Shown: positions 28,601 through 64,000, counted from the stretch's first letter. The stretch: DNA of 64,000 bases from Mytilus trossulus (GCF_036588685.1 NC_086377.1:43586001-43650000), one strand, 5' to 3'. The notes: a model not told the origin generated them from the letters alone. Translations and numbers: made by a program.

Positions 28601-31600
28601 CCATTTTTACTTCAGGGGAAACTTTAACTTATAATCAGATATTCCCAAAATATATGACTTGCGTGAATGTTTTCTTAAAATACATTTTATTTAATCAAGT
28701 AAGGAATTAGCAGTTGTTTGTAAATTTATCCAAATTCTGTGCAATTTCATGCAGTGCTAAACGGAAGTCTTGTCTAAGACCGTATTATCTGGCCGATGAC
28801 GGACACAATACATGGAAGCTTTTATTTTTGTTTTCCTTCCACCTAACCAAAACGAAATAATCACAACCGAGGATGACAAATGTGACTATGCATGATACCT
28901 GTAGTACAAATAGGCTTGATGATTAATTTATTGTGGAAGGAAGAGGAGCGACATATTAGCTGATGTCTACTCATTTAATCATGTTCATATTATAGAAGTG
29001 GTTGAGATTGATATTTTATATATAATATAATAGTATTCTTGGTATTGCAATTCAACATTAAAATAAAACGAAGTACTTTGTTTAATTGCTTGTATCTAGA
29101 AACATTATGAGTGATCAAATTTAACATTATGTGTGATACTGTGTCAATGAAATATAATAACAATATAACAAAAATAAGATTTAAATGGTATCCAACGGTT
29201 GTATTAAGTTTCACCGTCGGTGTTTGAATTAAAAAAAAACAATGAGCTTTTTATAAAATTATGCATATAAGTTGTACTCCCAACTTAGATGCTCTGCCAC
29301 AAAATATGTATAACATTCGGTGAAATGCAGGGTTTCTTTTAACATCAAGAAAATAAGGGCAGTACATTCACTGGTGTTTACACGACTTCCTATATATTTT
29401 TCGTGTTGAAGTAAGAGGAAGTATAAGAAAAATATTGTGTTTGAATTTAATTTTTAAAATGATTTAAATGCTATTCATTGGTAACCTTTGGCTGACCTAG
29501 TTCCAATACGCCACCTGTGAAATTGATATCTTTGAGCATCCATCGTAAGTACATTTTATATTTCCACTTTCTTCAGAATTGATTTAAGGATTCTAAAATG
29601 ATTGTCGTTACCAATACACAAACCAGTGCAACTTTATTCATATAATTCTGTTTTTTTCTTCTTAAATCACCTTTTCAATATTTATATTTGGACAAAAATT
29701 GACTGTTCTGGGTAGAAAATTATCTGCAACAAAGATATCAATTATTTCCAAATTTTCAACTTTATTTTTTTTTTAAATTAGCTGTCTATCGGATTTTTTT
29801 TGTTATTATCAAAACATTATTTTAATTATTCTGATTGTATGGTGTGAAAAACATCTGGAATTCAATATTGATTTTTGAGTGTACCCCGGGTCGAATTAAA
29901 CCACTAAATGCATGATTCGTTGAGTATCTATATCAATTTCGTATTCATATTGGATACCATTGAAAATCATATATGCTGAATAGATACTTGATCATTTTGT
30001 TTTAATGAATCCATGTCCAGCTAAGAACTTGACCACCAGTAGTTTTTTTATTTATTCAAGTGATATGCAATTTTAACTGGTAAACCATAAGTGAAAGATA
30101 CCTTCGGTATTGATCTCGTTGGTCCAAAAAAAAAGAGAAATAAGGTCAAGGTCATCAGTCAATGTCATATTTTGGATTCTAATTTTTGGCGTTTTTTAAT
30201 TCCTGCAAAAATAGTACAGGATATCGACAACACATTTCTATTTAATTGTCATTTGTAACATGTCATTACTCCAAAATTTGGGTTGGAAGGGTGCATAGAC
30301 AATAAGTACGAGTTTTCGCCTTTCTTATATTTAAAATAAATCTTTAAAAGGGGAAACNNNNNNNNNNNNNNNNNNNNNNNNNNNNNNNNNNNNNNNNNNN
30401 NNNNNNNNNNNNNNNNNNNNNNNNNNNNNNNNNNNNNNNNNNNNNNNNNNNNNNNNNNNNNNNNNNNNNNNNNNNNNNNNNNNNNNNNNNNNNNNNNNNN
30501 NNNNNNNNNNNNNATGATCATGTGGAAAGTTAAGCTCCATATCAGTGTTGTTGGAATTTATTTAATTAAGGTAGAAGCTATGAAAAAGCTTGAAGTGTTG
30601 TCATAATGTGCAGATATTTTCAGAGAAGTTTTAATACCAAATATATTTTTGCAAAGATAAACATGGATAATACGTGTTATTGTTTTTGTTGAAGCCATTA
30701 AAATTGAAACTGCATTTTTTTTTTTTTTTTTTTTTTTTGTACATAATATTGTAGAAATCATACTCTGCGTTAGTGTTACTGTAGCTGTGGATGTGGTACT
30801 GGTTAATAAGTTGCTGAAATATTGCGTCGTTGAGGTTCGCATAGACACAGACATTGCAATAGTGGCTTTGGTATTTTTCGGAGTCACCGTTTCTGTTGAT
30901 AAATGTACCTCTAAAAATAAAGGAACAATAATTTTACAAAAGAAGCCAAATGTATAACAAATTTACAAAAGGCAGGTATAAAACAAACGATAGCAAAAAT
31001 GAAGAAACAAAAAACAAGTTGGTTACTTATTCCTTATTCCTTGTTTGTCACTTATTCCTTATCCGTTACTTATTCCTTATCCGTTACTTATTCCTTATCC
31101 GTTACTTATTCCTTATCCGTATAGATAAAGTCATTTTTGACACAAAATTAGTTTTAACCAGACTACAAATACCTGTACAATACAATGTAAACGCTGATTG
31201 ATCTCTATTACTCCTTGGGTCTTCTGATGAAAAATATGAACGTCTTTAGAACGAAACATGATTTCCTGCTTGCAGTCAAAACGTTTCTTCTGGTTCACCA
31301 GTTTAAAAAAAAACTGTTATTTTTCTAATTTATTAGAAGACAGTTAAGTACAATTTTAAAGCGTGACTGAACTTTAGAAAGTGAACACTTAGAGTTATTG
31401 TTAATTATTTTACGGTTGATGAATTGTATTTTCAAATGAAACGGAATAAAATGTGTGTTCATGTAGATATACTTAAATGATACTTATATTATAAATGTCA
31501 CTGTACCATCGCTGTTTTAAAAAATCGTTCTACCATGGATACACATAATTATTTGAATTTTTGATATATTTTTACAATATTTGAATATAGTTTTTAATTG

Positions 31601-53129: not shown

Positions 53130-53141
53130 TGGTATAAACTA

Positions 53142-53900
53142 TCTATAATACTAAAATTACGAGGTCCAATTTGTCAGCCGTCATCACGTAAAAACGATGA
53201 ATCAGAGAATTCAACTTTATATATAACTAATATAGTACAATGCTGTTGGTTAAAAATTACACCACTCCAGACCCTTTTTGTTTTCCACATAATTAATATT
53301 GCCAATAATTAAGAAGTTCCGGGTCGAATCCGACACCGATACCAATAGTATATTCAGCTGTCACCTATTACCTAATCTGTACGTTCCGCATCTGACAGGC
53401 GCACCACCAAACGCTGTAATTAGAATTTTGCTATATACACGGGTCGTAATCACAGGGTTGACACTACTTAATTAAATCATTGTCACATTGTTCCCGATTG
53501 TAGTATTTTAATCAGTATGACTTTCTAAGATGACAATACGAATAATAAAAATCTGGACTTAAAATAAGGCGTATAGGTACAGCATGTACAGTTTTCAATT
53601 TGACGTAAAACAGCGAATCAAACAATTCAACTTTATATAACTCATAAAGGACAATGATGTTGTTTAAAAAAATACTCCTTTCCAGGCCCTTTTGTTTTCC
53701 AAATAAAATTAATGATACCAATAATTGATAAGTTCCAGGTCGACGGGTTCAAACAGAAAGATATTGAAAGCAGAGAAAACCGTGCATCTTATATTCGGCA
53801 TGACTTTATCAGATGACAATACTAATACTAAAATAAGGCTTTCGCATAGTTATATTCTTTAATTCAGTCACAAACCCGCGATATCACGGGTGTGTTCTAG
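53142..53900 (+). mobile_element. Non-autonomous Helitron (759 bp)
   Basis: 5' TC and 3' CTAG, inserted between A53141 and T53901 with no TSD. Subterminal hairpin ACCCGCGAT/ATCACGGGT 5 bp before CTAG. Internal duplication (~53190-53330 vs ~53605-53745). Confidence 0.88.
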
Positions 53901-54693
53901 TTATAATTATAAAGACAAACTAGATACATGCATCAAGTCGTAAAAGCCCTATTCATACTTAAAAATAAGAATTCAACTTTTCCTTCAATCATTCAATTCA
54001 GATAAATTGAAATACCAACATATTACCCCACTAAGTTGTTTTAAATTATAAATTTAATACATTTGAATGCATTAAGCAACTGACGTTGGTTACAAAACAT
54101 AATTAAAACAAGTACAATGTGTTCCTTTTAACAAAATAAGACATCATTATAAACGGTGAGTTGATTCTATTACCAAACTTATTTAATTATCCGCAAATTT
54201 AAAACTTATAACAGATGTAACGTGTAACAAAATTAATCATTAGCTGGCATGTAAATGTTAACACGGCTTACACAACACAAAGCATTTTTATTTAATACAT
54301 CTAAGCACAAATGTAACTTAACTATTAAAAAATAGTTTAATCAGTATAAATGCTACCCAAGTAAGCGATAAGATAAATTAATGAATCAAACTATTTGCAA
54401 GAAATAACTTTCAAATAAAATAAAATTATTCTTTTACAAATTACAGAAATAAAATTATTCGGAAAATTCAACTGAAATAACTAAATCTATCTATCAATAA
54501 AACATATGTCTTATATTATATCTAAATCAGCCTATCCCTTTTGTGTTCCTTCAGTTCAAATCACGCTATGAACAAATCACGAAAAGCATGCAATGTTATA
54601 CCAAATAAAAGCGGGAAAACCGCGTATGAAATTATATGGGTAAATAAAAGACGCTCAAGTCCTTAAAAATTGAAGACAAGTTAACTCTAGTTT

Positions 54694-55085
54694 CACTGGG
54701 GTAAAGCTGATGACCGTAACTGCATTCACGGTCATCCCAAGATGTCAGCTGAAAAAATAGGTCAGTATTTTTATTGTCTGTTAAGGTGTTTCTACATCAT
54801 TTTCTTTACAAAGCATACATTGGTACGATGTAAATTTATAAAAGATTCACACAGAAGTCACAAATCTCTACCTAGGAACGTGTATAGAACGGGAAATTGG
54901 ATTTGAAAAATTCGCTAAGATGATCGTAAATCATCTTTAAAATATTTTCAGGATGACCGTAACATATAATAAGGATGACCGTGATTGGTAAAATGATGAC
55001 CGTAATTTCGAAAGGATGACCGTAATTTATAAAGGATGACCGTAACTTTCATAGTATAACCGTCATTTCTAAGAAATATCCGTCT
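54694..55085 (+). repeat. Putative left end and subterminal GATGACCGT(AA) motif array of the P-like element
   Basis: Motif at 54709, inverted at 54728-54737, then at 54951, 54973, 54995, 55014 and 55034 plus 2 degenerate copies at ~20-bp spacing. Candidate terminus CACTG at 54694. Confidence 0.7.
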
Positions 55086-58000
55086 TTGCATTACCTTTTT
55101 TTGTAACAAATAATTAATCGTGTTAGTGTAAGACGTATCTATAAGACAACATTATCATAAAGGTAGAGAAAAATAAGACGTGCTTCAAATACATGGTTCG
55201 TCATATGAAACATCAAACTACAAGCCAAAAGATTTTTTTATTTCTGAGATTCCTATTAATCTTATATAATAAATACATCTTTTTAGAAATGACAAAAAAA
55301 GGCAATGGATGTACAGCCATTTATATCATGTCGTTTCAACTACCATTGCAGATGTCGTTTTTTTTATTTCAGATACGTACATGTGTTATCAATTTTCCAC
55401 TTGCAAGTTCACCTCATCTAATGTAGACAGCATTTTAATACACACTATAGACAATCATTTTGGTCCACAAACATTTAGTTTTAGGAAGAAAGTTTTGGAT
55501 GAAAACACTGGTCATACAGCATATAGGTCCGTACATTTCGGAATTGAAGTCACAAAACTTAAAATGATGTTAGCAAAAGGTTATAAGCCAAATATAAATT
55601 TAGAAGAACAAACCATATGTTTCAAAAGATGTTCCTCGACTTTGAAAGTGAGTGGCGATTATATCGAACAAGAGTGTCAAACTGAATTAAACAATGAACT
55701 TTATGATATATTGCCAAATATTGAAACAAAGCTAAAAGAGATTGGAAGATACGAGAACTTCATTTCAGTGTTGAAATCCATAGCTAGTGGAATATTAACT
55801 CAAAATATTGCTTTTCATTTGTTACTGGATGTCGGAAGATTCTATTCCCAGTCAACAATTTACTCGACAAGATATGTTCCAGAAACTCTGGCATTCTGGA
55901 TAACGATTAAGAAACTATTCAAGGGTAAAGGAGTTAACTTTTTTAGAGGTTATAAAGCACAAGATATATCCGCTGAAAACGCACCAGTCAAACCAACTGA
56001 ATGCAAAATAAATTTTGCTGTTCCATCAGATCCAGTATTGACAAGAGAATGTGTTAGTTTTCTGGCAGATGCCGAAAAAACTGGAATGTTACATACATCA
56101 CTAGATGCCTTCACAAAGAATAAAACTGGTCAAGATGTCAAACTGTCGATAGATGGTACAAAGTTGGCATGTGGTTTAGGTGTACTTGGTGATGAAGATT
56201 TGTGCGGGTTTGAAAATCCCCCAACTCTGTCTGACCGTAAAAGAAATCTTGAAATAGAACTTAACACTCTGAAAGAAGTAAAAGACATCACAGAAACAAA
56301 CTCAATAGATAACACGATAAATATTACTGATTTAGACAAGGACAATATTTTAACAATGAAACAAGCAATTCTTATATCGATCACAAACCTAAGCATCCGC
56401 ATTAAAGACTTGAGGGAGCTAATTGTGAAAAAGAAGTTAGGATTGACAAACCTGATGAAAGAAGTAGAAGGTGACTGGAAAGATAGTAAACTCGCACCAG
56501 CGATCAGTTTTTGCAAGACAAAAATTATTCACTCACAGTCAACAATAAAGGATCTGTTAAACTGTATTGACAATCTTGGCTTTATTGTTGCGTGCATTAA
56601 TGGCACCGCTGCAGACTATGTAATAGGATGTGGGACAAAAGTTCATCTAGATAATCAAACTAATTATATATGCTTGAAGCATCTTACAACAGACCTCGAG
56701 ATAAATGCCGAAACGTCAGACAGCATAAAACAAAGGAGTGATAACTGGAAAAACTTGAGAGCAGGTAGTCGAGTAACTGGTAGTACATTGTTCCGTGCTA
56801 TAGGATTGGGCACTCTGAAAGAACAACAAACACATTACGACAAAGTGTATCGTGGTGTTGAAGTTCCGGTGTCTTCAAAACTGCAGCAGCTTTTCGACTA
56901 TGGTACAGCCCAGGAAATAAATGCAATAGGAACACTAGTTGGGACGATCATACCTGTCTACTTTCCTCAGTTGCAATATAGGGAAGATGGTTGTAAGATT
57001 CTTCCGATTGGAGATTCATATGCCATAATCAGCGGTGATGGCAGTGGTATTGATCATATGGGTGAAAATAAAGTAGCATTTGAAATTAAATGTCCGATTC
57101 CAAATAAGGAAAGAACTACTGATTTACACTACGAGATACCCGTGTACTACTCAACTCAAGTTTTAAGTCAACTGAAAGCCAAACAAAGTTTAAAGTTTTG
57201 TTACTTGAGTTACAATCCAGGAAGCACAACCTTCATTGAAGGCATTATGAATGATGATTTATGGGGTAAGGTATGGGATTCTACTTCGGAACTGTATGGT
57301 AGAGTGGATGCAACAAGGCCTACGAGAAATAAACCAGAGCAGAAAGTGTTGCTAGCTGATCTGAAAGAGTATGCAACAGCATCTTAATTCGTTGCCGAGT
57401 TTCCTTCGTTGTTAAGCGTCCAGTGTAGTTGTGAGTCTACTGATGATTATGATAATGTATACGGATATCGTCGTTGAACACTTCTTTGGACACACTTTCA
57501 ATTGTAGTGGATAAAACGTGTACTGCGTTGAATGATGCCTACCAAACTTTGCGCAAGCCAGCAAAAGAGATTTTGCTGACTGTTGTTTCCGATCTTGAAC
57601 GCAAGACCTCTGATGATTTTGACACAGCAAACTATGCAGTTCCTATCCAATATGCTCTTTCTGGATACAGTCTTTCAATGTGTTGCGTTCGAAAATTACT
57701 AGACATGTCGTTGGTAGAATGTTCAAGTCGAAAATTAAATGTTAAGGCAATCGCCTTCGATGGGCAATTTCTTGAGTTGGCGGTTTCTGACGACTGTGGC
57801 CGACCTCTTACAATCTGTCGTTTTATGAAGCAGTTCTGGGATCAGGTAAAAAGGACCGACAAAGCTATTAAATTGACTACTTTATTGAACCTGAACAAGT
57901 TGCCGTCTATATCAACGTCTAAAGATCTGTTTGAACATTTTGATATTCATAAAACTCCAAACTCAATGATAACAATAAGTAAGAAAGAAAAAAGTAACAA

Positions 58001-60900
58001 AAACTCTATCTGGGAAGAATATCAGCAAAGCAATTCAGGCTTCACAGTCAAACGTCAAGAATGTCGAAACAGAAACTACATCAGATGATAACCTAAAGAC
58101 TGCCCACCTGGATATTTTGCAATACATTCCGAATGAGATTGTATCCGAATTGGATGAGTCCATGCTCGAAATTCTTAGACAACCATGTAAAGCTGTTACA
58201 GATGATGCAAATACCAATGAGCTATCACTGGCAAATGAAACTGACTACAAACCAGAGGATATTGACTTTGAAACGTTAATAATATCGCTGATTGCATCAT
58301 CAGATGAAGGGACAAAATGGATGCAAGTCTCGTTTGAATGTTTCAAGCAATGCTTTGCAAATGCAAAAACTATAAAAAAATCCTTTACATCAGCAGAATT
58401 GAAAGTAATTGCAGGTGTTACCGAGACTTTGGCGTTATATTCAAAGATGTTGAAACCAGCATTAGTAAACTTAGTGTGCAAGCTATATGGCGATGGGTCC
58501 AATATATCTTCTGTTAGAACAACCAATCCGAAATCACTAAAGGCACTCGTTATGTGCAAGATAAAGAAATGGCCAATTTCAGCAGTTAATGTTGCATTTG
58601 CACAATTAAACTTTCGAAGTGCACTAAATGAATGGGAAAGTGAAAACGCTTTTAATGGGTCATGGAATATGGAAACGGAAAATGGACAACAATATGAAAT
58701 TCATCGATGGTACGCACAACCGATGATAGCAAAGGGCCAAATGATCCAGCCTATTATAGATCCTCATCATCTGTTTGTCAATAATAGGGCAAGATGTTGT
58801 TCTAAAGGTATTTCTGGTATGGGAGTCAGCAGTGAAGCTTGGTGGAAAGTAGCTGGGAATTGCACAGAAAACGGCACAGGTCTATCATTGGAGATAGCTA
58901 AGGAACTTCGTGACAAACAAAAAAATTCTTATGCGCAGACCACTTTCAGCGAAAAAGTACAATTTGAAATGATGAAAAATGGAGATTATACAGAGGCTGA
59001 ATGGTGTAGACTGATTCGAAATTGGTATGCAGCTATCGATGAGGGTGGTATGTGTATAGAGAAACGTATTGAATGCTTACTAGCGATGAGGGATAAATTA
59101 CTGCCATATTTACATGTTGGTCACTTTCCGCCGCCAGGAGCATATGTAGCCTCTCTTCCAATGGCCCAGTTTGAAGGGATACTGAGCAATGTTGACAGGC
59201 GATTGCAGCTGTATGGAATGGTACAACGAGGAAGTTATAACCAAAGAGCTGTTACCAGCCTGGACTCAGAAACATTTTTTTCAGGGTTTCAGGTAAATAT
59301 GAAAAATATGTTTAACTGACATTACAAATTAAAATTCATGACCACTGCCATTGATCATACATCAAAAAATGAACAGAAAATATTGTTATGGACTATATAT
59401 ATGGCTAACTTTAATTATTGTGTACGATGATTTGAAATTGAGCCTTTGATCATGAGACATGAAAGCTTAAGCCAAGTTTGACGAATTCACTATTTTGGAT
59501 TATAGCTTGAAACTATTATAAATACATACTGTTCCATGTTTGATTGGTTAATATTAAAATGATCAGCGTACGGTTAGTATTTTGATAAGTGTAATGTATT
59601 GTGTAACCATTTTCTGAAGTCTTCAATAATTATAAATATCATATAAAAGTACTTCGTTATATTTAGATAATTGTTTTTAATGGACAACTTAATACAAAAT
59701 TAATTTTTTTAGGACTATGACCCAAAGGGGACTGGTGTGTTGAGACCAGATGATATACCAACAGCTTTAGGTGCAGCAGTGTGTTTGTTCAGTCAACGAA
59801 TGGATTCTAACAGGTGATTTAAACGCTATAATGTGCTCAGTTTTATCGTCAAATGCAGTTTTGTCTCATATATCTCAAAATATTCTCTGTTGATACAGAT
59901 TTATTTGACCATGCTTGTCGTTAATCTCTCTAAATGGTCAACTATTCAGTGCTTATTATGTACATTACTAGTATACTAAATATCATATTTGAATTATTTA
60001 AATTGTAAATTATAGGAAGATCTACTCTCAGGCATCTGATTGTCTTATTTTGATAGTTGTTGATGGTATTTTCAATACTATGAACACCATTCCCTGTCAT
60101 TATATTTAACATTTCATTGTAGAAAATTTTATATGAAGACGTCCAAGAAAACAAGAGTTTATCCAGAACAAAGTCTCAGTCAAAACTGTAGCGCCGATGG
60201 AGAAATGGAAGAAACTGAGTTGTACAACTGTTTCAATACTCGTATCATTAAAATAAAGTAAGTCAGGTATATGACAGATGTTATCCATTCGTTTGATTTT
60301 CTTGAGTTTCTGATTTTGCCATTTGATTAGAGACTTTCTGGTGTAGAAAACCGCAGAGATTTTTTGTAATTTTTCCTTTTACTACATTTCCGTATAAAAT
60401 ATCATGATGTTTTATGTATGACAATGTTTGAAGTTAAAACACACAATCGATGTCAAGTGCACAGTAATTTAATTGCAATGATATTCATAGGCAAAATTGA
60501 GAACTGAAAAGTCTTTAAGCTTTTGAACTTCATTAGTCATTAACAGAATTGTGTACAAGCGGATAACATTTTGTCATCTGTTGATCGGATTTACTTATTT
60601 TCTATTGAAATGGGTATTAATAATAATACTACCATTAAACTATATGCTTGATGTATTCGAATGAAATAATATTTATCCCTCAAATGTATGATGTTTTATG
60701 TATATTACAGATCAAACCAATTTGATCTCCCTGAAAGAAAAGCTGTTAATCCCAAAAGAAAATGTGGAAGAATTTCTTCATTTGGTGTCCCTAGTAGAGG
60801 TGCAGAAGGAGCACGATCTCACCACAAGACAAATGAGGAAAAGATATTAGCGCATAGACGATATGGAATTTCTGATGACAATATAGATTTAAAAAATTAA
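54742..60900 (+). pseudogene. P-element-like DDE transposase with inserted YqaJ (lambda-exonuclease) domain and N-terminal C2H2-like finger; 1 nonsense + 2 frameshifts
   Basis: Phase-compatible exons 54742-54760, 55373-59292, 59713-59813, 60123-60257 and 60711-60900 (4365 nt). P-like motifs in order: KLSIDG, KAIAFDG, IIDPHHL..NR, DKQK..AQTTFSEKV, CRLIRNWYAAID, TSLDSETFFS. YqaJ motifs: QRSDNW..R...VTGS, G...E, SGDG, EIKCP, YYSTQV.SQL. Lesions: TAA 57385, frameshifts at ~57456-57474 and ~57981-57993. Confidence 0.8.
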
Positions 60901-60998
60901 TTGCTGCTGTCCAATTGAATCTGTAATGAAAATGAAAAATAACCACACACATGTCAATTTCTTCATCTGTTATTTAATGCATTTTTTATGTACATTAT

Positions 60999-62528
60999 TT
61001 AATGTTTTTTTGTCATGTGTCTCTTATAATTGGATCTATATTTATATGAAATGTTACAGATTATACACACTAAACACTTGGCCATGTGTTCTGCTTGTTC
61101 ATGTCTTCTTAAAGATCTTTTATAAGAAAAGCTGGTGCCACACTCCTTGCACGCAAATTTCTGTTGTAAGTGTTTTGCCTTGATGTGTATCTGTAGGTCC
61201 TTATTGTGGACATAGTCCTTTCCACAATCCTTACACTTGTATTGCTTCTCCTGAAATAAATTAACCGAAAAATAGATTCAATATACAATGACAAATAAGA
61301 CAATAAATACAATGTGGTTTGTTGTCGAGCCTGCAATTGTTGTTGCAGAAAACTAGGTATAGGGATAGTGATCATGTGGCGGCTACTGCGGCATGAGCTC
61401 AATGTTTAAAAGTTATATATTTTAGAAGTTGGAAAACTCTGATGCTTCATACTTTGTATATAGATGCCTCATGTTACAACGTTATCGTCTGTCACATGTC
61501 CGTGCTCCTTGGCCTCATTTTCATGGTTTAGTGACTATTTTAAAAAAGAGTTAGGAATTTTTGTAATGTTAATTTTCTATCTTATTATGGGCAACAGGGT
61601 AACTATATTTGGTATGTGCGTACCTTGTAAGTCCCTCATACCCGCCAGACAGTTTTCACATGACATGGGCCTCATATTATGTATCAGTGAATAAGGTAAA
61701 GTTCAATATTTCAGATACAATAAGCTATATGTCTAGTATATTCGGTGTATGGAAGGACTGTAAGGTGTACATGTCTACTGGCAGGGGTCATAAGACCTTG
61801 ACCCCATTTTCATAAAATTTATTTGTTCAATGTGAGATTCAATTAATCATCTAAAGTTTACCTGCACATGATTCAAAACATGAGATCGAAACAAAGTCCT
61901 TGATACATATTTTTTAGGACACTGTGCACAACTGAAAGGAGGTTCCTCATGTTCTCTTTTCTTATGGACTCTTAGACCCTGCGTGGTTTGGTATGTTTTC
62001 CCACATTTGTCACATTGTTGAGTCGCTGAAATAACAAAATATTGATTTAAATTTTATATTTGTCATTAAAAATATTCTGGAGTAACCACTTATGCAATAC
62101 TGAAGAGTTATCAGTCACAATTTGAATATTTCGTATTCACAAAACCCTTGATTGGTTATACTATAAGTTATAAAGATGTCTACTGCCATCAAATAAATTA
62201 TATATTTCTTTTAACTCAGGATTGTTTTAACATTGAAGTGAACGGACGTTGACAACGACCTTGTTTACAGAAATGTTGAGAGTTCAATTTCAGTTTGTCT
62301 TTTACTTTTACTATATTTTATTGCTTTCTATGTAATGTATTGCACGATTGTTTGTTGTTTGCTCTACGTCCAGTGGGAACTATCTAAAGCATTATTCGGA
62401 CGAGTATTGTTATTTGACAGTTTCCAAATACATCTTACCAGTGACCGTTTTTTCCAAAGGGGTACTTGCACTCTGGGTTTCAGGGTCAAAATTAAGAATT
62501 GACCCGTCGTGACCTGATATATCCTTTC
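60999..62528 (-). CDS. C2H2 zinc-finger protein, 5 tandem fingers (5' exons unresolved)
   Basis: Exons 62439-62528, 61862-62025 (CDKCGKTY..LRVHKKREH; CAQCPKKY..FRSHVLNH) and 60999-61250 (CKDCGKDY..HIKAKH; CKECGTSF..HEQAEH; CIICNISY..HMTKKH*). GT-AG junctions, phases match, no stops. Not in the ORF track. Confidence 0.9.
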
Positions 62529-64000
62529 CTGTAATATATAAATGATAACTAAGTCATAGCTGCAACAATGTATATCAAGAAAAAGATAATCATGAGATTT
62601 TTAATAAAGTTCCAGATTTTTATTTTTCAACAATAGATTTATCATTTTTAACTTGGGATCAGAAACCTTAAAATTCTTATAACTTTCAGCCAAAAATTAA
62701 AAAAAAAAAGTAATTTGAATTGAAATTTTCCTTAGATGAATATTAAAAACAATCGATTCTGTTATTTAGTTTCATCGGAAATATCAATTATGGACTATGT
62801 TTTCTTAACAAACGAAACAAACAAAACAAAACAAAACTCAAGAATAATGAATAAAAAACAACATTTTAAGGTAGCCAGAGGGTCCTTCACTTACCATGTT
62901 GCAAATGTTATACCCTTGGACTACCTAAAGTACATTTCCTTATAAAATCCAGATGATATTAAATTATAGTCTGACTGAATAACACAGTTGTGTTCTGTTC
63001 AGGGGTGATGAAAGAATTTCTAGAAAAACACATATTTGAAAATTTAATAACTTTTTAGGTAATGGAACGATCATTTGATTCTGAGTTGAGTGCCAGGCCA
63101 GGTAGATTCGATCATGTCAAATTTTTATTAAGACAGTTTTACGGTTCAGAAAATATATTACAAATACTGCAAAACAATTCCAATTTTTACTGAAAAAGTA
63201 CACGGAGATATGAAACGATTAGCCTGAATTTTATTTTCAAATTTATCGAGGTTAGAAGAAATTTATGAAAAAGCTGTCAGCCCTACAACCACCAACCCCG
63301 ACCCCCTTTCCCCTGGAGTTTTACCAAGAAATGTACTTTTCAACAACAATAAAAAAACAAATAGAACATAACTCATAAACGAATCTGTCTCGGGCACTTT
63401 CACAATGACATGCATGAATCAAGGTTAATTTAATATCATATAGGTTGCCATATATGCATCTGCATATTTGCCAATAAACAGTATGTGATCACGAGTTTTA
63501 ATTGTATATACTTTCAAAAATGCAGATGGGCAACTTATTAATTTCTTATGCTAGTATTTAATTTTGTAGCTGTCTTAATTGTTGGAAAAGAGGGGCGAAA
63601 GATACCAGAGGAACATAGTGAAAACATATAATAGTCGTTATCTCGGGATCACATAACAGTTTTTAGTATATCTGCAGATGCGTATACATACTTCAACGTT
63701 TATGATACGACCCCGTCTAATAGAAAACCAACAGAGTGATTCAAAATTTTGCAATGACTCAAATCATGAAGTTTACATCATTAGACTCATAACAATTGAT
63801 AGCTAAAATAAAATTACTAAAATTAAGAGTTGATCATGTGTTCATAAGTGTAAGTGCCCAGACTATCTATATACCATCAATACTGTCCAACGATATATCC
63901 TTAAAAAGTAAAAATAATTCATTTAAATAGAACAAATTGTTAAAAAAAAAAGAAAGTCAATTGATTAGTTGTGATCCATTGCATGTTATTAACAACTTAA

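What the first reader, a model, noticed from the sequence alone, without database searches (positions are those of the whole stretch)
54694..62938. Candidate two-gene transposon: transposase tail-to-tail with a 5-finger C2H2 gene
Seen: the transposase stop (60900) and the zinc-finger stop (60999) are only 98 bp apart on opposite strands, in a region where other genes are kilobases apart. Established: Harbinger (Myb-like partner), CACTA (TnpA) and Kolobok (KolX) elements carry a second gene alongside the transposase. Inference: the C2H2 gene is element cargo, acting either as the end-binding partner for the GATGACCGT repeats or as an autoregulator. The overlapping 3' UTRs could also form dsRNA. 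The right end is probably beyond 64000.
Basis: partly seen in the sequence, partly recalled or inferred. Interest (0 to 1): 0.8.

Follow-up and report, generated by a model that had tools for sequence, protein, structure and literature searches.

The report
Two-gene mussel transposon with zinc-finger partner
This is an 11-kb cut-and-paste transposon of the mussel Mytilus trossulus that carries a P-element-type transposase gene and, tail to tail with it, a small five-zinc-finger gene. The same gene pair recurs in about twenty diverged relatives in this genome, so the zinc-finger protein is a regular part of the element, probably the part that recognises its ends.

Summary

- **Element:** it runs from window 54694 to 1752 bp beyond the window (C5:43651752), 11,059 bp. 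It has 239-bp terminal inverted repeats (5'-CACTGGGG...CCCCAGTG-3') and a 5-bp target-site duplication (AGTTT). Both genes lie inside it.
- **Target-site duplication:** ten short derivatives of this lineage and three of a sister lineage also show 5-bp duplications.
- **Transposase:** the catalytic domain folds like the Drosophila P element transposase (Z 23.2) and follows a lambda-exonuclease (YqaJ) domain.
- **Zinc-finger partner:** a convergent 5-7-finger C2H2 gene lies 1-5 kb downstream of the transposase at 20 of 21 family loci examined, with transposase identity down to about 30%. No finger array occurs in 80 kb of control DNA. The two proteins co-diverge (Mantel r 0.95, p 0.00025), and the finger gene shows purifying selection.
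- **Expression:** spliced RNA contigs exist for both genes.
- **Likely function (inferred):** each end carries eight phased GATGACCGTRA repeats. In the sister lineage the repeat reads GATATnCGTAAC, and the specificity residues differ most in finger 4, the finger that a canonical register places on the changed triplet. This suggests end binding.
- **State of the copies:** the window copy's transposase has three inactivating lesions. The finger gene's start codon was not found.

The scan had noted this stretch before; no paper found describes this arrangement.

The parts
54689..54693 (.). Left copy of the 5-bp target-site duplication, AGTTT. The right copy is at C5:43651753-43651757, outside the window.
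   Evidence: All 10 non-autonomous derivatives checked in this lineage also have perfect duplications of at least 5 bp. So do 3 of 3 in the sister lineage.
54694..54932 (+). Left terminal inverted repeat, beginning 5'-CACTGGGGTAAAGCTGATGACCGT.
   Evidence: 240-bp inverted match at 93.75% identity to C5:43651753-43651514 (right end, beyond the window).: more than 40 repeat copies start at this base.
54709..55047 (+). Left subterminal array of eight copies of GATGACCGT(A/G)AnT. They lie 16, 43 (inverted), 226, 259, 281, 302, 322 and 342 bp from the terminus. The right end mirrors this at the same distances.
   Evidence: The 9-bp core is invariant in 15-16 of the 16 copies at the two ends. The sister lineage has copies at the same positions.
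55309..59292 (+). Main transposase exon: N-terminal C2H2-like finger, helical region, YqaJ/lambda-exonuclease domain and most of the P-type DDE core. In this copy it is broken by a TAA at 57385-57387, a 29-bp deletion at 57468 and a 1-bp insertion at 57988.
   Evidence: the RNA contigs lack the 1-bp insertion, and one (run X2) keeps the 29 bp.: fold match to P element transposase.
59713..59813 (+). Transposase exon encoding ...RPDDIPTALGAAV...MDSN. This is the end of the long ORF in the relatives that lack an intron here.
   Evidence: (GT..AG joint).
60123..60257 (+). Transposase exon encoding ...KTRVYPEQSLSQNC....
   Evidence: (joints in runs X1 and X2). The homologous stretch is contiguous with the main ORF in L029.
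60711..60900 (+). Last transposase coding exon (SNQFDLPERK...DLKN*), stop at 60898-60900. The RNA contig continues to at least 60953.
   Evidence: The exon is conserved in all 8 other lineages tested, and always lies between the main ORF and the finger gene.
60999..61250 (-). Last exon of the zinc-finger gene (fingers 3-5), stop at 61001-60999.
   Evidence: 55% amino-acid identity to the sister-lineage copy.
61316..61813 (.). Unrelated high-copy interspersed repeat nested in intron 2 of the finger gene.
   Evidence: at least 40 copies at about 81% identity. (the only part covered by the raw RNA reads).
61862..62025 (-). Zinc-finger exon with fingers 1-2.
   Evidence: The reading phase is continuous with the last exon.
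62439..62530 (-). Upstream RNA-supported exon of the finger gene. It is open in the finger frame but has no ATG, so the start of the coding sequence is unresolved.
62531..64000 (.). Remaining interior of the element. It continues beyond the window to the right subterminal array and TIR, which end at C5:43651752.

Best explanation
**Shown.** Window 54694 to C5:43651752 is one 11,059-bp copy of a cut-and-paste DNA transposon of Mytilus trossulus.
- It has 239-bp TIRs (CACTGGGG...), eight phased GATGACCGTRA repeats at each end and a 5-bp TSD.
- It carries two convergent, spliced and transcribed genes.
- Gene 1 encodes a transposase of about 1,480 aa. In order, it has an N-terminal C2H2-like finger, a helical/coiled-coil region, a lambda-exonuclease (YqaJ) domain, and a P-element-type RNase-H-like catalytic domain.
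  - Inferred catalytic residues, in L025 numbering: D827/D829, D880, a DxxH motif at 1266-1269, and E1436.
- Gene 2 encodes a small protein with five C2H2 fingers.
- The pair is ancestral to the whole family in this genome, and the two genes have co-diverged.
- The window copy is decayed: its transposase has three inactivating lesions. RNA contigs from other individuals lack at least two of these lesions. Hundreds of 2-3-kb internally deleted derivatives at 90-95% identity show recent mobility.

**Inferred mechanism.** The finger protein is the element's sequence-specific end-recognition subunit.
- Fingers 5 to 2 would read the roughly 12-bp subterminal repeat as GAT-GAC-CGT-AAn.
- The phased arrays at both ends would load several copies, which would recruit or organise the transposase for synapsis.
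- This is the role the Myb-like protein plays in Harbinger and TnpA plays in En/Spm.
- The tight tail-to-tail layout probably also couples the expression of the two genes.

**Confidence by part.** About 0.95 for the two-gene element; about 0.45 for the end-binding role.
For: **Architecture**
- TIRs and TSD enclose both genes.
- The left end is shared by more than 40 copies, and the right 640 bp by more than 40 copies.
- In the C1 copy the match to this right-end 640 bp (C1:95270026-95270665) stops exactly at the element end, so the flank beyond it is unrelated and the insertion looks independent.

**Conservation of the pair**
- Convergent finger genes lie next to the transposase at 20 of 21 loci.
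- 7 of the 8 best partner hits lie next to a transposase or a transposase fragment.
- No finger array occurs in 80.6 kb of control DNA.
- In the sister lineage the right terminus lies outside the finger gene.
- Co-divergence: r 0.95, Mantel p 0.00025.
- Purifying selection on the finger exons: pN/pS 0.37, with pS saturated.

**Transposase type**
- VIA-align Z 23.2 to P element transposase 6P5A, against 8.0 for RAG1 and 7.2 for Hermes.
- Foldseek E 3e-4 to the same structure.
- YqaJ by Pfam and by PDB profile search.

**Transcription**
- Spliced contigs for both genes.

**End binding**
- 16 phased repeats with a conserved core of 12-13 bp, which is about four fingers' worth.
- The sister lineage has repeats at the same positions, reading GATATnCGTAACTG.
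- Between the two lineages, fingers 2 and 5 keep all four specificity residues and finger 3 keeps three of four.
- Finger 4 changes most: position 6 R to Q, position 3 S to T, position 2 R to K (from the sequences).
- Under canonical docking (my knowledge of the Zif268-type code: Arg6-G, Gln6-A, Asn3-A), finger 5 (R6, N3) reads GAt and finger 4 reads GAC in one lineage and ATn in the other. That triplet is the one that differs most between the two repeats.
- Every deletion derivative keeps the arrays.
Against: - No binding was measured, and the register was chosen after seeing the data. Several registers and both strands are possible. Fingers 2 and 3 do not fit the simple code.
- The fingers have H-x4-H spacing and non-TGEKP linkers, so canonical docking may not apply.
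- The transposase has its own N-terminal finger domain, which could bind the ends instead.
- In a third lineage (C19) the repeats (CTTCCTTTCCGATA) could not be matched to its 7-finger partner by the code.
- The start codon of the window lineage's finger gene was not found, so this lineage's partner may not be translated as modelled.
- Two raw RNA-seq runs show essentially no reads on either gene.
Confidence: 0.55

Rival explanations
1. The finger protein is an element-encoded regulator rather than a transposition cofactor. It would bind the element's own repeats or promoters to repress or time expression of the two genes. Convergent transcription, with stop codons 80-400 bp apart in most lineages, would add antisense or dsRNA control.
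For: - The tail-to-tail spacing is tight in many lineages: 98, about 100, about 80, about 115, about 220 and about 380 bp.
- The transposase RNA runs to at least 60953, only 46 bp from the finger gene's stop.
- The subterminal arrays overlap the likely promoter regions at both ends.
- Some deletion derivatives keep only the finger gene intact, as expected of a trans-acting repressor that spreads.
Against: - The spacing is 0.8-1.1 kb in two lineages, so overlap is not universal.
- No overlapping reads or small RNAs were seen.
- This reading does not explain why repeats sit symmetrically at both termini and are kept in every mobilised derivative, although it is compatible with that.
Confidence: 0.25
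2. The finger protein acts on host DNA or chromatin rather than on the element's ends. It might choose target sites, tether the element or counter host silencing.
For: - The family is maintained under purifying selection with variable finger number (5-7) and fast-evolving contact residues. This could track host targets.
- One solo partner gene has no transposase within 5 kb.
Against: - The 14 TSDs seen show no common target motif beyond AT-richness.
- The changes in finger 4 between two lineages fit the changed triplet of the element's own repeat. Host-directed binding would not predict this.
Confidence: 0.12
3. The finger gene is a host gene that merely lies next to a transposase, or both were copied together by segmental duplication.
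For: RefSeq annotates related copies as ordinary zinc-finger proteins, for example 'zinc finger protein 227-like'.
Against: - Both genes lie inside one TIR/TSD-bounded unit.
- The right-end match in the C1 copy stops at the element's end, so the flank there is unrelated.
- The same convergent pair occurs at 20 of 21 loci across lineages with 30-60% transposase identity, and the proteins co-diverge.
Confidence: 0.02

Closest known systems
Drosophila P element transposase / THAP9 (P superfamily)
   Same: - The catalytic domain has the same fold (Z 23.2, 290 residues, rmsd 3.5).
- It has a weak Pfam TNP-like_RNaseH_N match.
- It carries DxxH and ...ENFF motifs.
- The element has TIRs plus internal repeated binding-site-like motifs.
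   Different: - The TSD is 5 bp, not 8 bp.
- No THAP domain was detected.
- A lambda-exonuclease domain is fused upstream of the core.
- The TIRs are 239 bp long.
- A second, convergent C2H2 gene is conserved. P elements encode one protein and its splice variants.
PIF/Harbinger (transposase plus Myb-like DNA-binding partner)
   Same: It is a two-gene cut-and-paste element in which a small DNA-binding protein is a constant companion of the transposase. The proposed role, partner recognition of subterminal sites and recruitment of the transposase, is the same.
   Different: - The transposase fold is unrelated (DDE_Tnp_4 against P type).
- The partner is a Myb/SANT protein, not a C2H2 array.
- The TSD is 3 bp.
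- The partner's role here is not demonstrated.
En/Spm (CACTA) TnpA/TnpD system
   Same: - CACTG-type termini.
- Arrays of short subterminal repeats at both ends.
- Two element-encoded proteins, one of which (TnpA) binds the repeats.
   Different: - The TSD is 3 bp.
- The two proteins come from alternative splicing of one transcription unit.
- The transposase family is different; no Transposase_21-type match was found here.
ProtoRAG / RAG1-RAG2
   Same: - Two convergent (tail-to-tail) genes between TIRs.
- A 5-bp TSD.
- CAC... termini.
   Different: - The fold match to RAG1 and BbRAGL is weak (Z 7.4-8.0) against 23.2 for P.
- The partner is a finger array, not a kelch/PHD protein.
Kolobok lineages with accessory genes (KolobokE with a lambda-exonuclease-like nuclease; KolobokP with a His-Me nuclease gene on the complementary strand; PMC9587614)
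   Same: - A DDE transposase related to the P, hAT and MuDR group, with a C/DxxH motif.
- Abundant in bivalves.
- An exonuclease module or a downstream second gene on the opposite strand.
   Different: - Kolobok makes TTAA TSDs.
[quoted passage not shown]
- No long terminal direct repeats.
- The partner is a C2H2 array, not KolX or a nuclease.
- No Kolobok structure exists to compare folds.

Membership tests
P superfamily (P element/THAP9) | RNase-H-like DDE catalytic domain of the P element transposase type | tested here: met
   An AF2 model of L025 aa 500-1477 aligns to 6P5A/6PE2 with Z 23.2/23.1 over 290 residues. The next transposases are RAG1 (8.0) and Hermes (7.2). Foldseek E 3e-4. Weak Pfam PF21787 match.
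P superfamily (P element/THAP9) | 7-8-bp target-site duplication | tested here: not met
   The full-length copy, 10 of 10 derivatives and 3 of 3 sister-lineage derivatives all show 5-bp TSDs.
P superfamily (P element/THAP9) | N-terminal THAP DNA-binding domain | tested here: not met
   No THAP hit in Pfam on two full-length proteins at E up to 1. The N-terminal 520-aa model has no PDB match at E up to 0.001. The N-terminus carries a single C-x2-C...H-x4-5-H motif instead.
P superfamily (P element/THAP9) | GTP-binding insertion domain within the catalytic core | not tested
   A large insertion of about 380 aa lies between D880 and the DxxH motif, but its nature was not examined.
Kolobok superfamily | TTAA target-site duplication | tested here: not met
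   The TSDs are 5 bp and of varied sequence.
Transib/RAG-like | RAG1-type catalytic core (with 5-bp TSD and CAC termini) | tested here: not met
   The 5-bp TSD and CAC termini are present. The fold match to RAG1 and BbRAGL is only Z 7.4-8.0 against 23.2 for P, and there is no RAG1 Pfam hit.
CACTA/En-Spm (CMC) | 3-bp TSD and a Transposase_21-type transposase | tested here: not met
   5-bp TSD. No such Pfam domain.
ISL2EU (PHIS) elements with a YqaJ second gene | PIF-like DDE transposase, a separate YqaJ protein and a 2-bp TSD | tested here: not met
   Here YqaJ is a domain of the transposase itself, the core is P type and the TSD is 5 bp.
Two-gene cut-and-paste transposons (general kind) | Both genes lie inside one TIR/TSD-bounded unit, and the pair recurs in independent and diverged copies | tested here: met

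The most novel reading that the evidence does not exclude
This would be a previously undescribed branch of P-type transposons, found so far in molluscs, an annelid and amphioxus. In it, DNA-end recognition has been handed to a separate, modular C2H2 array that co-evolves base by base with the element's subterminal repeats. That would make it a natural zinc-finger-guided transposase, coupled to a built-in 5'-3' exonuclease that may process the excision or insertion gaps and relate to the unusual 5-bp TSD.
Probability: 0.35. Interest if true: 0.75.

Novelty: new variant of a known kind. Interest (0 to 1): 0.62.

Why it matters
Two-gene DNA transposons are few: Harbinger, CACTA, MuDR, some Kolobok lineages and ProtoRAG. 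Each has taught something about how transposases find their ends or were later domesticated.

- **Separate recogniser.** This family pairs a P-type core with a separately encoded finger array. Finger specificity can in principle be read from sequence, so the family gives a testable case of recogniser and binding site co-evolving across many lineages in one genome.
- **P-type fold.** The family shows that a P-type fold can go with a 5-bp TSD, no detectable THAP domain and a fused lambda-type exonuclease.
- **Annotation.** Dozens of "zinc finger protein 227-like", "ZBTB49-like" and "KRAB" gene models in Mytilus assemblies are transposon genes.

Tried and rejected
**Segmental duplication.** I considered this as the explanation for the 98-99% identical C1 block. 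I rejected it because the match to the element's right-end 640 bp stops at the element's right terminus and the window copy has its own TSD.

**Element ends at 55219 and about 65113.** The limits of the C1 homology have no TIRs. The true ends came from the high-copy derivatives.

**Start codon of the finger gene.**
- The ATG|GTAAGT at 62897 is out of frame.
- A scan for phase-compatible first exons gave nothing convincing.
- Both genomic copies read ATA at 62520-62518, where relatives would have their N-terminus.
- This remains unresolved.

**Searches that gave nothing useful.**
- The search of protein representatives with the three-finger exon was swamped by giant poly-finger proteins.
- A profile search of PDB sequences found only the exonuclease domain. 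The P-type relationship needed the structure route.
- No repeated motif could be defined within 1 kb upstream of several distant lineages.
- The simple recognition code could not be fitted to the C19 lineage.
- Literature searches for YqaJ with P element, Kolobok or zinc finger found no description of this family.

Full report
**The observation**

The window is G000:C5:43586001-43650000 of a 1.3-Gb genome. A protein that is 100% identical, on a contig of the same length as C4, identifies the genome as Mytilus trossulus.

A six-frame scan finds five C2H2 fingers on the minus strand. Two lie at 62014-61868 and three at 61235-61002, with the stop at 61001-60999. On the plus strand there are long open frames at 55309-57387, 57474-58088 and 58117-59319, and a short one at 60688-60900.

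Contigs from public runs that carry GT..AG joints join these pieces:
- Transposase: ...59292 | 59713-59813 | 60123-60257 | 60711-60953.
- Finger gene, on the other strand: 62530-62439 | 62025-61862 | 61250-...

Exon-wise translation shows the transposase frame runs through these exons to TAA at 60898-60900. Finger exons B and C are in phase with each other. Spliced models were handled exon by exon only; the joined step was left out.

**The element**

The near-identical block shared with C1:95.23 Mb (98-99%) covers both genes. Its limits (55219 and about 65113) have no inverted repeats.

The true ends came from high-copy DNA. More than 40 copies at 87-96% identity start at window 54692-54694. 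A 640-bp repeat lies just past the C1 block, 93-95% identical in more than 40 copies, and ends at C5:43651753. Several of these lie 1.5-2 kb from fragments of the first 105 transposase codons, on the same strand. They are therefore internally deleted derivatives of this element.

The two ends are 240-bp inverted repeats at 93.75% identity, 5'-CACTGGGGTAAAGCTGATGACCGT...-3'. The window copy is flanked by AGTTT on both sides. Ten derivatives of 2.2-2.9 kb all have perfect duplications of at least 5 bp. Three derivatives of a sister lineage do too (ATAGA, ACAAT, ACAGT).

The element therefore spans 54694 to C5:43651752, 11,059 bp, and contains both genes. The predicted 7-8-bp TSD is not.

**What the transposase is**

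Pfam finds nothing in the window's own broken frames. Uninterrupted 1,467-1,477-aa ORFs of the same family elsewhere in the genome give a YqaJ match and a weak TNP-like_RNaseH_N match. I found no THAP domain.

An AlphaFold2 model of residues 500-1477 (mean pLDDT 77.7) has two parts:
- Residues 5-223 of the model match lambda exonuclease (Z 16.5).
- Residues 308-976 match the Drosophila P element transposase (Z 23.2, 290 residues, rmsd 3.5). RAG1 reaches only 8.0 and Hermes 7.2.

Invariant residues in a 27-sequence alignment, together with the Pfam register, place the catalytic acids at D827/D829 (SDLDR), D880 (SFDGQW) and E1436 (ENFF), with a DxxH motif at 1266-1269. This placement is an inference. 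On it, the exonuclease domain lies upstream of the whole core, not inside it.

The N-terminal 520 residues fold into a small finger-containing beta domain, a helical domain and long coiled coils. They have no PDB match.

Homologues with 27-46% identity occur in other bivalves, a gastropod, the annelid Owenia and Branchiostoma belcheri. All are annotated as uncharacterised or 'YqaJ domain-containing'.

**State of the copies**

Relative to the C1 copy and to the RNA contigs, the window's transposase has three lesions:
- An in-frame TAA at 57385-57387.
- A 29-bp deletion at 57468.
- A 1-bp insertion at 57988.

The C1 copy has its own frameshift, a 213-bp deletion and three insertions. Its finger gene has two frameshifting indels.

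The window's finger exons B and C are intact, but no start codon was found. The RNA contig from run X2 keeps the 29 bp that the window has lost, so less decayed copies or alleles are transcribed in other individuals. Two raw RNA-seq runs show almost no reads on either gene.

**Is the finger gene part of the element?**

- **Enclosure.** The gene lies between the TIRs of a TSD-flanked unit.
- **Sister lineage.** At C5:10.9 Mb the transposase is 59% identical and the finger exon 55% identical. It has the same 2+3-finger exon structure, convergent with the transposase. Its right terminus (73% identical to the window's) lies 2.9 kb outside the finger gene.
- **Distant lineages.** In every distant lineage for which downstream DNA was in hand or could be fetched, a 5-7-finger ORF of about 200-230 aa sits 1-3 kb downstream, always on the opposite strand. 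These are C4:8.6M, C7:25.4M, C10:11.6M, C41, C10:61.4M, C19, C12:24.2M, C3:63.6M, C5:28.4M, C7:68.3M, C7:73.5M, C9:50.5M, C6:50.6M, C6:82.8M, C40, C11:11.6M and C3:29.9M. The one exception, C10:78.08M, is a stop-ridden fragment.
- **One family.** The partners share an acidic N-terminus, a finger pair with H-x4-H then H-x3-H spacing, and a last finger reading ...K(W/Y)RS(S/N)(L/Y)xxH.
- **Control.** Unrelated flanks totalling 80.6 kb contain no array of three or more fingers.
- **The reverse test.** 7 of the 8 best partner hits lie beside a transposase or a truncated one. Two (C3:9.5M and C42:2.4M) are deletion derivatives that keep transposase residues 1-209 and an intact partner ORF. One (C5:31.28M) has no transposase within 5 kb.
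- **Co-divergence.** Over nine pairs, transposase and partner distances correlate (Pearson 0.95, Mantel p 0.00025; Spearman 0.49). Both give the same groupings.
- **Selection.** Between the window and sister lineages the finger exons have pN 0.31 against a saturated pS of 0.84.

Host-gene capture or coincidence is therefore excluded, and the pair is old.

**How it may work**

Each end carries eight copies of GATGACCGT(A/G)AnT, at 16, 43 (inverted), 226, 259, 281, 302, 322 and 342 bp from the terminus. The spacing is about 20-22 bp and the orientation relative to the terminus is the same at both ends. All derivatives retain these arrays.

The sister lineage is itself recently active, with eight ends at 97-100% identity. 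It has copies at the same positions, but they read GATATnCGTAACTG.

I compared the four specificity positions (-1, 2, 3, 6) of each finger between the two lineages:
- Fingers 2 and 5 are unchanged.
- Finger 3 changes only at position 6.
- Finger 4 changes at 6 (R to Q), 3 (S to T) and 2 (R to K).
- Finger 1 changes at -1 and 6.

Under canonical antiparallel docking (Arg6-G, Gln6-A, Asn3-A; my knowledge, not a tool result), finger 5 (R6, N3) fits GAt. Finger 4 fits GAC in the window lineage and ATn in the sister lineage. That triplet is the one that differs most between the two repeats.

This co-variation is the main support for end binding, and it has clear weaknesses:
- The register was chosen after seeing the data.
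- Fingers 2 and 3 do not obey the simple code.
- The fingers are non-canonical.
- A third lineage could not be fitted.

The transposase's own N-terminal finger domain remains an alternative end-binder.

The terminal transposase exon is conserved in all lineages and always lies between the main ORF and the partner gene. Stop-to-stop gaps are about 80-400 bp in seven lineages and 0.8-1.1 kb in two. Compaction, and possibly 3' overlap, is therefore common but not universal. Actual overlap was not observed.

**Comparison with known systems, and novelty**

- The catalytic fold is P type, but the TSD (5 bp) and the missing THAP domain fail two P criteria.
- The TSD also excludes Kolobok (TTAA), CACTA (3 bp) and ISL2EU (2 bp).
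- The 5-bp TSD, CAC termini and convergent gene pair recall ProtoRAG, but the fold does not.
- Functionally the nearest analogues are Harbinger's Myb-like partner and En/Spm TnpA.
- The Kolobok survey (PMC9587614) lists accessory nucleases, helicases and KolX, but no finger-array partner.
- My full-text searches found no description of a P-type element with YqaJ or a C2H2 partner. Repbase could not be consulted.

I class it as a new variant of a known kind.

**Earlier notes of this scan**

Two notes touch this stretch:
- The phased GATGACCGT array is confirmed and extended.
- The idea that YqaJ is inserted inside the DDE core does not agree with my domain order.

**Limits**

- The N run at 30358-30513 was left untouched.

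Noticed in passing
window 61316-61813: A high-copy interspersed repeat (about 81% identity, at least 40 copies) lies inside intron 2 of the finger gene. It is the only part of the stretch covered by the raw RNA reads (depth up to 78). Reads show 'goes back 269' joints (61775 to 61507), so other copies are tandem arrays of a unit of about 269 bp.
   Followed up: partly
window 53140-53901: Another high-copy repeat of about 760 bp (88-95% identity, at least 40 copies) lies just left of the element and is unrelated to it.
   Followed up: no
L051 (C1:95249548-95250131): The C1 copy of the element carries a nested MITE of about 580 bp, with GGTTCATCATAA... inverted ends and a TTAA duplication (piggyBac-like). 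The window copy lacks it.
   Followed up: no
L083 (C3:9517800-9522800) and L084 (C42:2370200-2375200): These are deletion derivatives of the C4 lineage. They keep transposase residues 1-209 and, next to them, an intact convergent 221-aa finger ORF.
   Followed up: partly
G000:C5:31277566-31278216 (minus strand); L082: An intact 230-aa member of the partner family has no transposase match within 5 kb on the expected side. It may be a solo or domesticated copy.
   Followed up: partly
G000:C1:95250228-95270026: In the C1 copy, the match to the last 640 bp of the element is 100% identical to the window's. It lies about 20 kb beyond the rest of the copy, which is 98-99% identical. The intervening DNA was not read, so this could be large nested insertions, a rearrangement or an assembly effect.
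   Followed up: no
window 55309-55460: In place of a THAP domain, the transposase N-terminus has a single C-x5-C-x12-H-x4-H motif (C-x2-C in relatives). In the AF2 model it folds as a confident small beta/alpha domain (pLDDT above 85) with no PDB match.
   Followed up: partly
P0043: A family member is deposited as 'MAG: YqaJ viral recombinase family protein [Candidatus Thiodiazotropha sp.]'. It is probably host (clam) transposon DNA binned into a symbiont genome.
   Followed up: no
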